Below, piece after piece: positions 13,390-14,820 of a stretch of 64,000 nt of DNA. Both the position numbers and the translations under genes were made by a program. The stretch is from Octopus sinensis (Eukaryota): NCBI RefSeq assembly GCF_006345805.1, contig NC_043010.1, forward strand, positions 61,380,001 to 61,444,000, read 5' to 3'. The notes under the pieces are model-generated. The model saw only the letters and a list, made by a program, of their open reading frames with translations, had not been told where the DNA came from and ran no database searches. Position 1 is the first letter of the stretch. Each line of letters opens with the position of its first letter.

Positions 13390-14820
13390 TTGTTGTTGCT
13401 GCTGCTGTTGTTGTTGTTGTGGTTGTGGTGGTGGTGGTGGTGGCGGTGCTGGGGGTGGTGGTTGTTGCTGGGCCGTCGCTGCGGGTGGGATCTCTACCGG
13501 CTGAGATGAAGAATGCTCGCAATGGCCGCTGTTCTTTGTGGAACTCGCTCCTCGAGGAGTGTAGGTCTTCCTGTTGGTGTCTTGATTGGCCGCCAACGAC
13601 TTCTCACCAGACTCCTGCGATTCAGCATGGTGGTGGTGGTGGTGGTAATGGTGATGGTGGTGGTGGTGATTGCAGTAGTTTGGGTGTCGGTTTTGAATCT
13701 TTGGTTCATTGTTCCGTTTGGGAGTGACTTTGTGTGCGGAGCAGCAGGTCGGAACAACCGGCGATGCTGCTTTGCAGCTATGGACTAAACAGGTCGTAGC
13801 TGGAGCCGGCTGACAACATGGTGACGGTATCTTCTCACCTGTATGGGTTCGTTCATGAGTGTTCAGGTGAGCTCTTTGGCTAAATGATTTGTGACAGTAC
13901 ACACAGGTAAATGGCTTCTCCCCAGTATGAGTTCTTTGGTGATTGTTCAAATGGTCGCGCTGGCTGAACGCTTTCTTACACACGTGACACTTGAATGGTT
14001 TTTCGCCTGTGTGAATGCGTTCATGTGTGTTGAGGTGGGCTTTCTGGCTAAACGACTTAAAACACACGTCACAGTTGAATGGTTTCTCCCCAGTGTGAAT
14101 CCGCTCGTGGTTACGCAGGTAAGTTCTCTGACTAAACGTTTTGTTACAGATGTAACAGCTGAACGCCTTCTCCCCCGTATGGACCCTTTCGTGGTTCCTC
14201 AGATGCGCACGCTGACTGAACGCTTTCAAACAGAACGTGCAGCTGAAAGGTTTCTCCCCCGTGTGGACGCGTTGATGGTTACTCAAGTGGTCCCTTTGAG
14301 CAAACGCTTTGCAACACATGTGGCATCGATAGGGTTTTTCTCCCGAGTGGACCCTCTCGTGGACTTTCAGGTGGATCTTTTGGCTGAACGACTTCGGACA
14401 TGACTCACACTGGAATGGTTTCTCACCTGTATGGATGCGTTCGTGGCTCTTCAGGTGGGCCCGTTGACAAAATGCCTTGCAGCAGTACGCACAACTAAAA
14501 TGTTTGCCCCCAGCAAACGCTACTTCGTGATTGTTCAGATCCGCTCGTCTCGAGAAAGCCTTGCGACACGTGTTGCACTTGTACGGCTTCTCCCCATGTT
14601 TGTGATTATAATAAACCGGCTGCTCCTGCATGGCCACTGATTTCCGACTGCTGGAACCCTCCCTCGTTTCACTTGTCTCGTCACTGCTACCAGGAATGTT
14701 GCTGTTATTGTTATTACCATTATTGTTGCTGTTGTCATTGCTGTCTTGCAGATGGAGACCACAAGTATGATAGTTTGGTGGTGGCACCATTGTAGGATAT
14801 ATGGGTTGGTCGGAATACAT
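12952..14820 (-). CDS. C2H2 zinc-finger protein (ZNF-A), 622 aa: 1 degenerate + 8 canonical fingers, followed by polyH, polyP, polyQ(48) and polyG tracts
   Basis: Single uninterrupted ORF with repeated CxxC...HxxxH and TGEKP linkers (fingers at about 13843-14580). The ORF track starts at a TTG (14853); the first ATG (14820, context CACCATG) gives MYSDQ, matching the MYSVQ start of the paralog. Confidence 0.95.

What the first reader, a model, noticed from the sequence alone, without database searches (positions are those of the whole stretch)
13843..14580. Near-uniform Q(-1)/H(+3) fingers predict binding to tandem NGA triplets such as the (GAT)n SINE tails
All 16 canonical fingers of the two proteins have Gln at -1; His is at +3 in 7 of 8 (ZNF-A) and 5 of 8 (ZNF-B, 44668-45402); +6 is mostly N/T/S. 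Under the canonical C2H2 code Q(-1) reads A and H(+3) reads G, so each finger would read NGA and the array would read a triplet microsatellite such as (TGA)n, (AGA)n or (GGA)n. (TGA)n is the tail of the most frequent SINE here (more than ten copies) and resembles the tail of the RTE fragment. Hypothesis: a KRAB-independent ZNF system that recognises retroposon tails or microsatellites, with the conserved C-terminal motif as effector.
Basis: inference. Interest (0 to 1): 0.78.

Follow-up and report, generated by a model that had tools for sequence, protein, structure and literature searches.

The report
Cephalopod zinc-finger pair with uniform fingers
Two old, intact zinc-finger transcription-factor genes of a cephalopod-only family have nearly identical DNA-reading residues in every finger, which predicts binding to GA-rich, three-base-periodic DNA; the proposed link to the (GAT)n tails of the local SINE is weak.

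Summary
ZNF-A (12955-14820, minus) and ZNF-B (44338-45903, plus) each have one degenerate finger plus eight canonical C2H2 fingers. Gln is at -1 in 16/16 fingers. His is at +3 in 7/8 and 5/8. N, T or S is at +6 in 13/16.

This is not recent finger homogenisation: fingers are 57-74% identical in DNA within ZNF-A (45-71% in ZNF-B), and synonymous sites between the genes are saturated.

Both genes belong to a small family found only in coleoid cephalopods. It has an N-terminal MY..QP motif, a single-exon zinc-finger array and a C-terminal WEN(N/S)YxWxRGFP motif. Gln(-1) is family-wide (50/61 paralog fingers). His(+3) is specific to a well-supported clade of A, B and a cuttlefish gene; the other paralogs carry Asn(+3).

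Published finger-module tables agree that QxxHL helices read NGA. The +6 residues, however, favour AGA or GGA over TGA. A heuristic matrix ranks (AGA)n above (GGA)n above (TGA)n for A, and (TGA)n scores poorly for B.

The SINE and its (GAT)2-7 tails are real (about 13 copies or fragments), but it is absent from 68 kb of cuttlefish sequence that holds the conserved His-type gene.

Verdict: conserved transcription factors predicted to bind GA-rich DNA; a role in recognising SINE tails is unsupported.

The parts
12955..14820 (-). ZNF-A coding sequence, one uninterrupted ORF of 622 aa from ATG (MYSDQPIYP...); stop codon at 12952-12954
   Evidence: Pfam zf-C2H2 and zf-H2C2_2 only
13828..14583 (-). 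ZNF-A finger array: degenerate finger 0 (SRRADL, no second His) plus 8 canonical fingers, all with Q at -1 and 7 with H at +3
13274..13426 (-). ZNF-A polyglutamine tract (about 50 Gln, CAG/CAA), next to His-rich and Pro-rich tracts; a likely low-complexity activation or interaction region
   Evidence: sequence; function inferred
12973..13065 (-). ZNF-A C-terminal family motif WENSYSWARGFP...SVFPC
44338..45903 (+). ZNF-B coding sequence, one uninterrupted ORF of 522 aa (MYSVQS...); stop codon at 45904-45906
44662..45417 (+). ZNF-B finger array: degenerate finger 0 (SRRANL) plus 8 canonical fingers, all with Q at -1 and 5 with H at +3 (K, N, N in fingers 1, 5, 8)
45670..45762 (+). ZNF-B C-terminal family motif NSYCWSRGFP...SVFPC
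9913..10171 (+). SINE copy ending in (GAT)7, the proposed target type. Other copies with (GAT)n tails: 15363-15549 +, 34076-34271 -, 34615-34828 +, 40952-41212 -, 49234-49470 +, 51164-51426 +, 55979-56089 -, 58841-59095 -
28681..28704 (+). (GGA)7 run inside a GA-rich stretch (28575-28705). It is the top-scoring site in the window for the ZNF-A matrix and second for ZNF-B. In-silico match only

Best explanation
ZNF-A and ZNF-B are two intact, anciently duplicated, single-exon genes for sequence-specific DNA-binding transcription factors. They belong to a small C2H2 family restricted to coleoid cephalopods. The family has an N-terminal MY..QP motif, a degenerate leading finger, a Krueppel-type array with TGEKP-like linkers, and a C-terminal WEN(N/S)YxWxRGFP motif.

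Gln at -1 is an inherited hallmark of the whole family. His at +3 defines the subclade holding A, B and a cuttlefish gene. Both have been kept by purifying selection.

Mechanism (inferred). Each finger lays its helix in the major groove. Gln(-1) reads A at the 3' base of its triplet, His(+3) reads the middle G, and +6 (mostly Asn) weakly favours A at the 5' base. The arrays should therefore prefer purine-rich, 3-bp-periodic but imperfect GA sites, roughly tGA-AGA-tGA-AnA-AGA-AGA-tGA-tGA for A and GAA-AGA-AGA-AAA-GGA-AGA-AGA-tnA for B. Probably only a subset of fingers is engaged at any one site. The Gln/His/Pro-rich tracts and the conserved terminal motifs would recruit partners.

Shown: gene integrity, helix residues, family membership, age and conservation. 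Inferred: DNA binding, the motif, and the effector roles.
For: 1. Helix residues.
2. Only zinc-finger Pfam families match, with no KRAB, SCAN or BTB.
3. A and B are 65% identical in register over 255 aa. Synonymous sites are saturated (pS 0.92) against pN 0.23, and finger-to-finger DNA identity is 57-74% within A (canonical fingers) and 45-71% within B, so there has been no recent homogenisation.
4. An exhaustive profile search with the C-terminal motif finds about seven real hits, and every hit that carries a source name is from Octopus, Acanthosepion (Sepia) or Argonauta; the rest are unnamed Logan assemblies.
5. Q(-1) occurs in 50/61 paralog fingers, N(+3) in 39/61 and H(+3) in 1/61.
6. The cuttlefish locus L002 holds an intact 703-aa ORF with an SRRANL finger 0, followed by QRAHLLS, QRAHLQN, QKAHLTC, QRAHLII, QRVHLAN ... 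QRANLKK. It groups with A and B at 98/97 support.
7. Module tables link QxxHL helices to NGA triplets and QRANL to AAA. The designed protein Aart, solved as PDB 2I13, carries QLAHLRA and QRANLRA fingers and is among the closest solved chains.
Against: No binding data exist. Recognition-code predictions for long natural arrays are often only partly right. My matrix uses hand-set weights. Tyr(+3) in A finger 5 and Lys(+3) in B finger 1 have no clear code. No annotated A or B ortholog was found in other species, so conservation rests on one cuttlefish gene whose exact orthology within the clade is unresolved. The species of the window was not identified.
Confidence: 0.6

Rival explanations
1. One reading: a KRAB-independent system in which the two proteins recognise retroposon tails, specifically the (GAT)n = (TGA)n tail of the abundant SINE, or triplet microsatellites in general. 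They would control those elements through the conserved C-terminal motif.
For: NGA reading is consistent with the code. The SINE tails are real and frequent. Several tails rank among the top ZNF-A matrix hits in this window: 10150, 34805, 28255, 40951. T or S at +6 in ZNF-A fingers 1, 6 and 8, and Asp(+2) in fingers 3 and 7, are compatible with TGA at four positions.
Against: Asn or Lys at +6 in 11 of 16 fingers favours A or G at the 5' base. (TGA)n is the worst of the three NGA repeats for A and poor for B (9.8 against 19.6 bits). The tails are 6-21 bp against a 24-bp footprint. The Q/H pattern is shared with a cuttlefish gene, while the SINE is absent from 68 kb of cuttlefish DNA. The specificity residues are conserved rather than fast-evolving. 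PolyQ and His tracts look more like an activator than a silencer (inference).
Confidence: 0.1
2. The uniform residues are mostly phylogenetic inertia. The fingers descend from one consensus-like QRxHL/QRxNL finger. The real binding site is a short, non-repetitive motif read by a few fingers, with the other fingers serving for spacing, non-specific affinity or protein contacts.
For: Q(-1) and H(+3) are already among the commonest residues in generic ZNFs, at 38% and 22%. Q(-1) is family-wide whatever the +3 residue. It is general knowledge that long arrays often use only 3-5 fingers.
Against: Synonymous sites are saturated, yet all 16 Gln(-1) codons are kept, and the +3 changes that did occur are single-base steps (CAY to TAC, AAY or AAG). 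That indicates selection on each finger, not inertia alone.
Confidence: 0.22
3. The arrays mainly bind RNA, single-stranded or non-B purine-rich nucleic acid, or proteins, rather than duplex DNA.
For: GA-rich and GAA-type tracts can form triplex or other non-B structures (general knowledge). Pfam gives weak side hits to zf-met and zf-C2H2_jaz for ZNF-B.
Against: Canonical 28-residue spacing and TGEKP-type linkers occur throughout. The jaz and zf-met hits cover a single finger that the standard zf-C2H2 model also matches.
Confidence: 0.05

Closest known systems
Generic Krueppel-type poly-C2H2 zinc-finger transcription factors (Pfam PF00096/PF13465); the closest solved chains are ZFP568, Aart, PRDM9 and CTCF
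   Same: Tandem 28-residue C2H2 fingers with TGEKP-type linkers; 45-56% identity to many vertebrate ZNF arrays
   Different: No KRAB, SCAN, BTB or ZAD domain. They have their own short N- and C-terminal motifs, found only in coleoid cephalopods. Uniformity at -1 is extreme (100% against at most 64% in the background)
Designed modular fingers (Barbas set) and the six-finger protein Aart (PDB 2I13)
   Same: The helices are near-identical to selected modules: QRAHLxx against QRAHLER (GGA), QxAHLxx against QLAHLRA (AGA) and QAGHLAS (TGA), QRANLKK against QRANLRA (AAA)
   Different: These are natural proteins. The +6 residues (N, T, S, K, V) differ from the modules, so the 5' base is only loosely predicted. 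No structure or affinity data exist
KRAB-ZFP/TRIM28 silencing of transposable elements in tetrapods
   Different: No KRAB domain. There is no lineage-specific turnover of the contact residues. The pattern is conserved between octopod-type and cuttlefish genes. There are only two genes rather than a large, rapidly evolving cluster
Repeat-targeting factors: engineered zinc-finger arrays against GGAA microsatellites (PMC9374162); GAGA factor and CLAMP on GA repeats (own knowledge)
   Same: Binding to purine-rich low-complexity DNA as a regulatory input
   Different: Those cases have measured binding, whereas here the target is only predicted. There is no sequence relationship beyond the C2H2 fold

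Membership tests
C2H2 (Krueppel-type) zinc-finger proteins | Tandem C-x2-C-x12-H-x3-H fingers that match Pfam zf-C2H2 and zf-H2C2_2 above the gathering score | tested here: met
   PF13465 at 181 and 187 bits, PF00096 at 102 and 136 bits; 8 canonical fingers in each protein.
C2H2 (Krueppel-type) zinc-finger proteins | Conserved TGEKP-type linkers, the signature of DNA-binding arrays | tested here: met
   All seven ZNF-A inter-finger linkers are T/SGEK(P/A). ZNF-B has TGERN, SGHRP, TGEKP, TGLRP, TGLKP, SGERP and SGEKP.
KRAB zinc-finger proteins | An N-terminal KRAB domain (PF01352) | tested here: not met
   One search finds no KRAB hit in either protein. The 'KRAB' names on two cuttlefish relatives are automatic labels on proteins that show only fingers.
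Coleoid-cephalopod MY..QP / WENNYxWxRGFP zinc-finger family (defined here) | C-terminal motif W-E-N-[NS]-Y-x-W-x-R-G-F-P followed by a ...SVFPC-like segment | tested here: met
   A has WENSYSWARGFP. B has NSYCWSRGFP, with the leading W-E replaced by L-P.
Coleoid-cephalopod MY..QP / WENNYxWxRGFP zinc-finger family (defined here) | An N-terminal MY[STPQ]xQ/P motif and a single-exon ORF with a leading degenerate or isolated finger | tested here: met
   A starts MYSDQPIYP and B starts MYSVQSMAFP. Relatives start MYSFQPVFP, MYPVQPMYP, MYPTQFVY and MYQSIY.
Coleoid-cephalopod MY..QP / WENNYxWxRGFP zinc-finger family (defined here) | Gln at -1 in most fingers | tested here: met
   50/61 paralog fingers, 16/16 in A and B, and 9/10 in the cuttlefish clade member.
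Zinc-finger proteins that target transposable elements | Demonstrated binding to the element | not testable with these tools
   This needs ChIP, CUT&Tag or in-vitro binding.
Zinc-finger proteins that target transposable elements | Rapid, lineage-specific change of the DNA-contact residues that tracks the element | tested here: not met
   The contact residues are conserved across saturated synonymous divergence and in a cuttlefish clade member. The SINE is absent from 68 kb of cuttlefish sequence (small sample).

The most novel reading that the evidence does not exclude
A coleoid-specific zinc-finger family has specialised in reading triplet-periodic, purine-rich low-complexity DNA. One subclade (A, B and the cuttlefish gene; His+3) would read (N)GA repeats, and the others (Asn+3) would read (N)AA repeats. 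Microsatellites, or retroposon tails derived from them, would then serve as regulatory landing pads, with the conserved MY..QP and WENNYxWxRGFP motifs acting as a new effector interface.
Probability: 0.15. Interest if true: 0.65.

Novelty: new member of a known kind. Interest (0 to 1): 0.35.

Why it matters
Cephalopod genomes carry a large, mostly uncharacterised C2H2 expansion. This analysis separates out a small, old, clearly delimited subfamily. It has recognisable terminal motifs and an unusually simple predicted recognition logic: Gln(-1) everywhere, with His or Asn at +3 by subclade. That makes it a convenient test case. A single SELEX or PBM experiment would show whether the canonical code holds for natural eight-finger arrays, and whether GA-rich or A-rich microsatellites are read by dedicated factors in these animals. 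As a transposon-control system it currently has no support.

Tried and rejected
1. Two word-index homolog searches over the finger regions were swamped by long vertebrate poly-ZNFs. No hit exceeded 56% identity, so no annotated ortholog of A or B is in that collection within the length limits.

2. A search with the ZNF-B C-terminal region alone found no candidate sharing enough words.

3. An exact look-up of both proteins found neither in the collection.

4. The PDB sequence search gives only generic finger arrays.

5. A literature search on octopus C2H2/SINE gave genome-level background only, with nothing on this family.

6. Recent tandem duplication or gene conversion as the cause of uniformity was rejected: finger DNA identities are only 57-74% within A (45-71% within B) and dS is saturated.

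7. One-to-one finger orthology between A and B could not be shown finger by finger, because all fingers are alike. Only fingers 0, 1, 4 and 8 pair best on the diagonal in at least one direction.

8. BLASTP identity alone did not separate the His-type from the Asn-type cuttlefish gene as closest relative. The tree did.

9. The species of the window was not determined.

Full report
**What is there.** The region 13843-14580 lies inside one uninterrupted ORF on the minus strand (12955-14820, 622 aa from the ATG, starting MYSDQPIYP). Its partner is an uninterrupted ORF on the plus strand (44338-45903, 522 aa, starting MYSVQS). The two genes are head to head, about 29.5 kb apart. Pfam finds only C2H2 finger families in both, and no KRAB, SCAN or BTB domain.

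**Check of the observation.** Each protein has one degenerate leading finger (SRRADL in A, SRRANL in B; Arg at -1, second His missing), followed by eight canonical fingers.
- The ZNF-A helices (-1 to +6) are QRAHLKS, QKIHLKV, QRDHLSN, QRAHLRN, QRTYLRN, QKAHLNT, QRDHLNN and QRAHLNT.
- The ZNF-B helices are QRDKLKS, QKDHLNN, QRAHLKN, QSAHLAK, QRSNLDN, QRDHLNN, QRAHLNN and QRANLKK.

**Comparison with chance.** As a background I used the 119 generic ZNFs that scored best against ZNF-B. This set is biased towards the query and so is conservative.
- In its 1549 fingers, Gln(-1) is 38%, His(+3) 22% and both together 16%.
- The highest Gln(-1) fraction in any one protein is 64%.

**Not a recent duplication artefact.** Canonical fingers within ZNF-A share only 57-74% DNA identity, and those within ZNF-B 45-71%. 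A and B are 65% identical in register over 255 aa. Between them, pS is 0.92 (saturated) against pN 0.23. All 16 Gln codons have nevertheless been kept. The +3 differences are single-base steps from CAY (TAC, AAY, AAG). The uniformity is therefore old and maintained by selection.

**Family.**
- An Octopus protein found in passing (P0097) has the same N-terminus (MYSFQPVFP) and the same C-terminal motif.
- An exhaustive HMMER search of 1.84 billion representatives with a profile of that C-terminal motif returned about seven real hits. Every hit that carries a source name is from Octopus vulgaris/sinensis/bimaculoides, Acanthosepion (Sepia) pharaonis or Argonauta hians. The others are unnamed Logan assemblies.
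- The family is therefore small and, as far as this search reaches, restricted to coleoid cephalopods.
- Its members are single-exon ORFs with four parts: MY..QP at the start, a leading degenerate or isolated finger, a finger array, and WEN(N/S)YxWxRGFP near the end.
- Two cuttlefish gene models are visibly wrong. P0124 is the tail of an 868-aa, 19-finger ORF. P0126 is spliced across 28 kb and skips the fingers of an intact 703-aa ORF.

**Where the pattern comes from.**
- Gln(-1) is a family trait, present in 50 of 61 paralog fingers.
- The paralogs carry Asn at +3 (39/61), with His at +3 only once.
- His(+3) is specific to A, B and the cuttlefish ORF in L002. That ORF has an SRRANL finger 0, then QRAHLLS, QRAHLQN, QKAHLTC, QRAHLII, QRVHLAN ... 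QKANLSI, QRANLKK.
- A maximum-likelihood tree puts these three together with 98/97 support. Their internal order is unresolved.
- Octopus and squid lineages are dated to about 220 Ma in PMC9795677. If the window is from an octopod, which I infer but did not show, the Q/H pattern is at least that old.
- In the cuttlefish, a second family gene of the Asn type lies 30 kb downstream. This mirrors the 30-kb pairing in the window.

**Predicted target.**
- It is established knowledge that Gln(-1) reads A at the 3' base, His(+3) reads G in the middle and Asn(+6) reads A at the 5' base.
- Published module tables seen here agree: AGA=QLAHLRA, TGA=QAGHLAS, AGG=RSDHLTN, TGG=RSDHLTT (PMC3607563); GGA=QRAHLER, AAA=QRANLRA (PMC9705829).
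- Aart, solved as PDB 2I13, carries QLAHLRA and QRANLRA fingers and is among the closest solved chains.
- A hand-weighted matrix (a heuristic, not a trained model) gives tGA-AGA-tGA-AnA-AGA-AGA-tGA-tGA for A and GAA-AGA-AGA-AAA-GGA-AGA-AGA-tgA for B.
- Perfect repeats score 26.7 bits for (AGA)n, 22.8 for (GGA)n and 21.3 for (TGA)n with A. With B they score 19.6, 18.7 and 9.8 bits.
- The best window sites are a (GGA)7 run at 28681, GA-rich stretches (28627, 38674) and, for A only, several SINE tails.

**The SINE.** A SINE of about 250 bp is present in about 13 copies or fragments. About 10 reach the 3' end ...GGACGTTAAAC followed by (GAT)2-7. It was not found in the 68 kb of cuttlefish sequence fetched. 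That is a small sample.

**Assessment.**
- The step to (GAT)n SINE tails is weak for four reasons. The +6 residues favour A or G. ZNF-B fits TGA poorly. The tails are shorter than the array. The residue pattern is conserved in a lineage where this SINE was not seen.
- There is no sign of the rapid contact-residue turnover typical of transposon-targeting ZNFs.
- The most likely reading is a pair of conserved transcription factors with Gln/His/Pro-rich low-complexity regions that bind imperfect GA-rich, 3-bp-periodic sites.
- DNA binding, the motif and the roles of the terminal motifs remain inferences.

**What failed.** Ortholog searches were swamped by generic ZNFs or found nothing. The species of the window and the RTE-tail remark were not checked.

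Noticed in passing
L002:9980-12112 and L001:8144-10750 (Acanthosepion pharaonis, GCA_903632075.3): Two public cuttlefish gene models of this family look wrong. P0126 (301 aa) is spliced over 28 kb and skips the finger array of an intact 703-aa single-exon ORF. P0124 (249 aa) is only the tail of an 868-aa ORF with 19 fingers.
   Followed up: yes
L002:40738-42804: A second family member (10 fingers, all Gln at -1, mostly Asn at +3) lies about 30 kb downstream of the His-type cuttlefish gene. This echoes the 30-kb pairing of ZNF-A and ZNF-B in the window and suggests an old two-gene cluster.
   Followed up: partly
window 59001-59412: A tandem array (about 6.9 copies of a 61-bp unit) is made of the 5' part of the same SINE (GGTGCTTTTACGTGTCACCGGCAC...), directly upstream of a full SINE copy at 58841-59095.
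   Followed up: no
window 40628-41110 (+): An ORF with a GIY-YIG nuclease domain (Pfam PF01541, E 3.6e-05) is interrupted by a SINE insertion at 40952-41212. It is possibly a remnant of a Penelope-like or other GIY-YIG element.
   Followed up: partly
window 57477-57998 (-): A mariner/Tc1-type transposase fragment (Pfam Transposase_1, E 2e-23).
   Followed up: partly
window 20521-24063: A 3.5-kb block of degenerate (TATA/TATG)n microsatellite. Similar TA/TG-rich blocks lie at 19448-19739 and 42232-42944.
   Followed up: no
window 13274-13426 and 13628-13668 (-): ZNF-A carries a run of about 50 Gln residues encoded by mixed CAG/CAA, plus His-rich and Gly-rich runs. ZNF-B has its Gln/Pro/His-rich tract at the N-terminus instead.
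   Followed up: no
window 53895-54932 (+): A 345-aa ORF with no Pfam match; nature unknown.
   Followed up: partly
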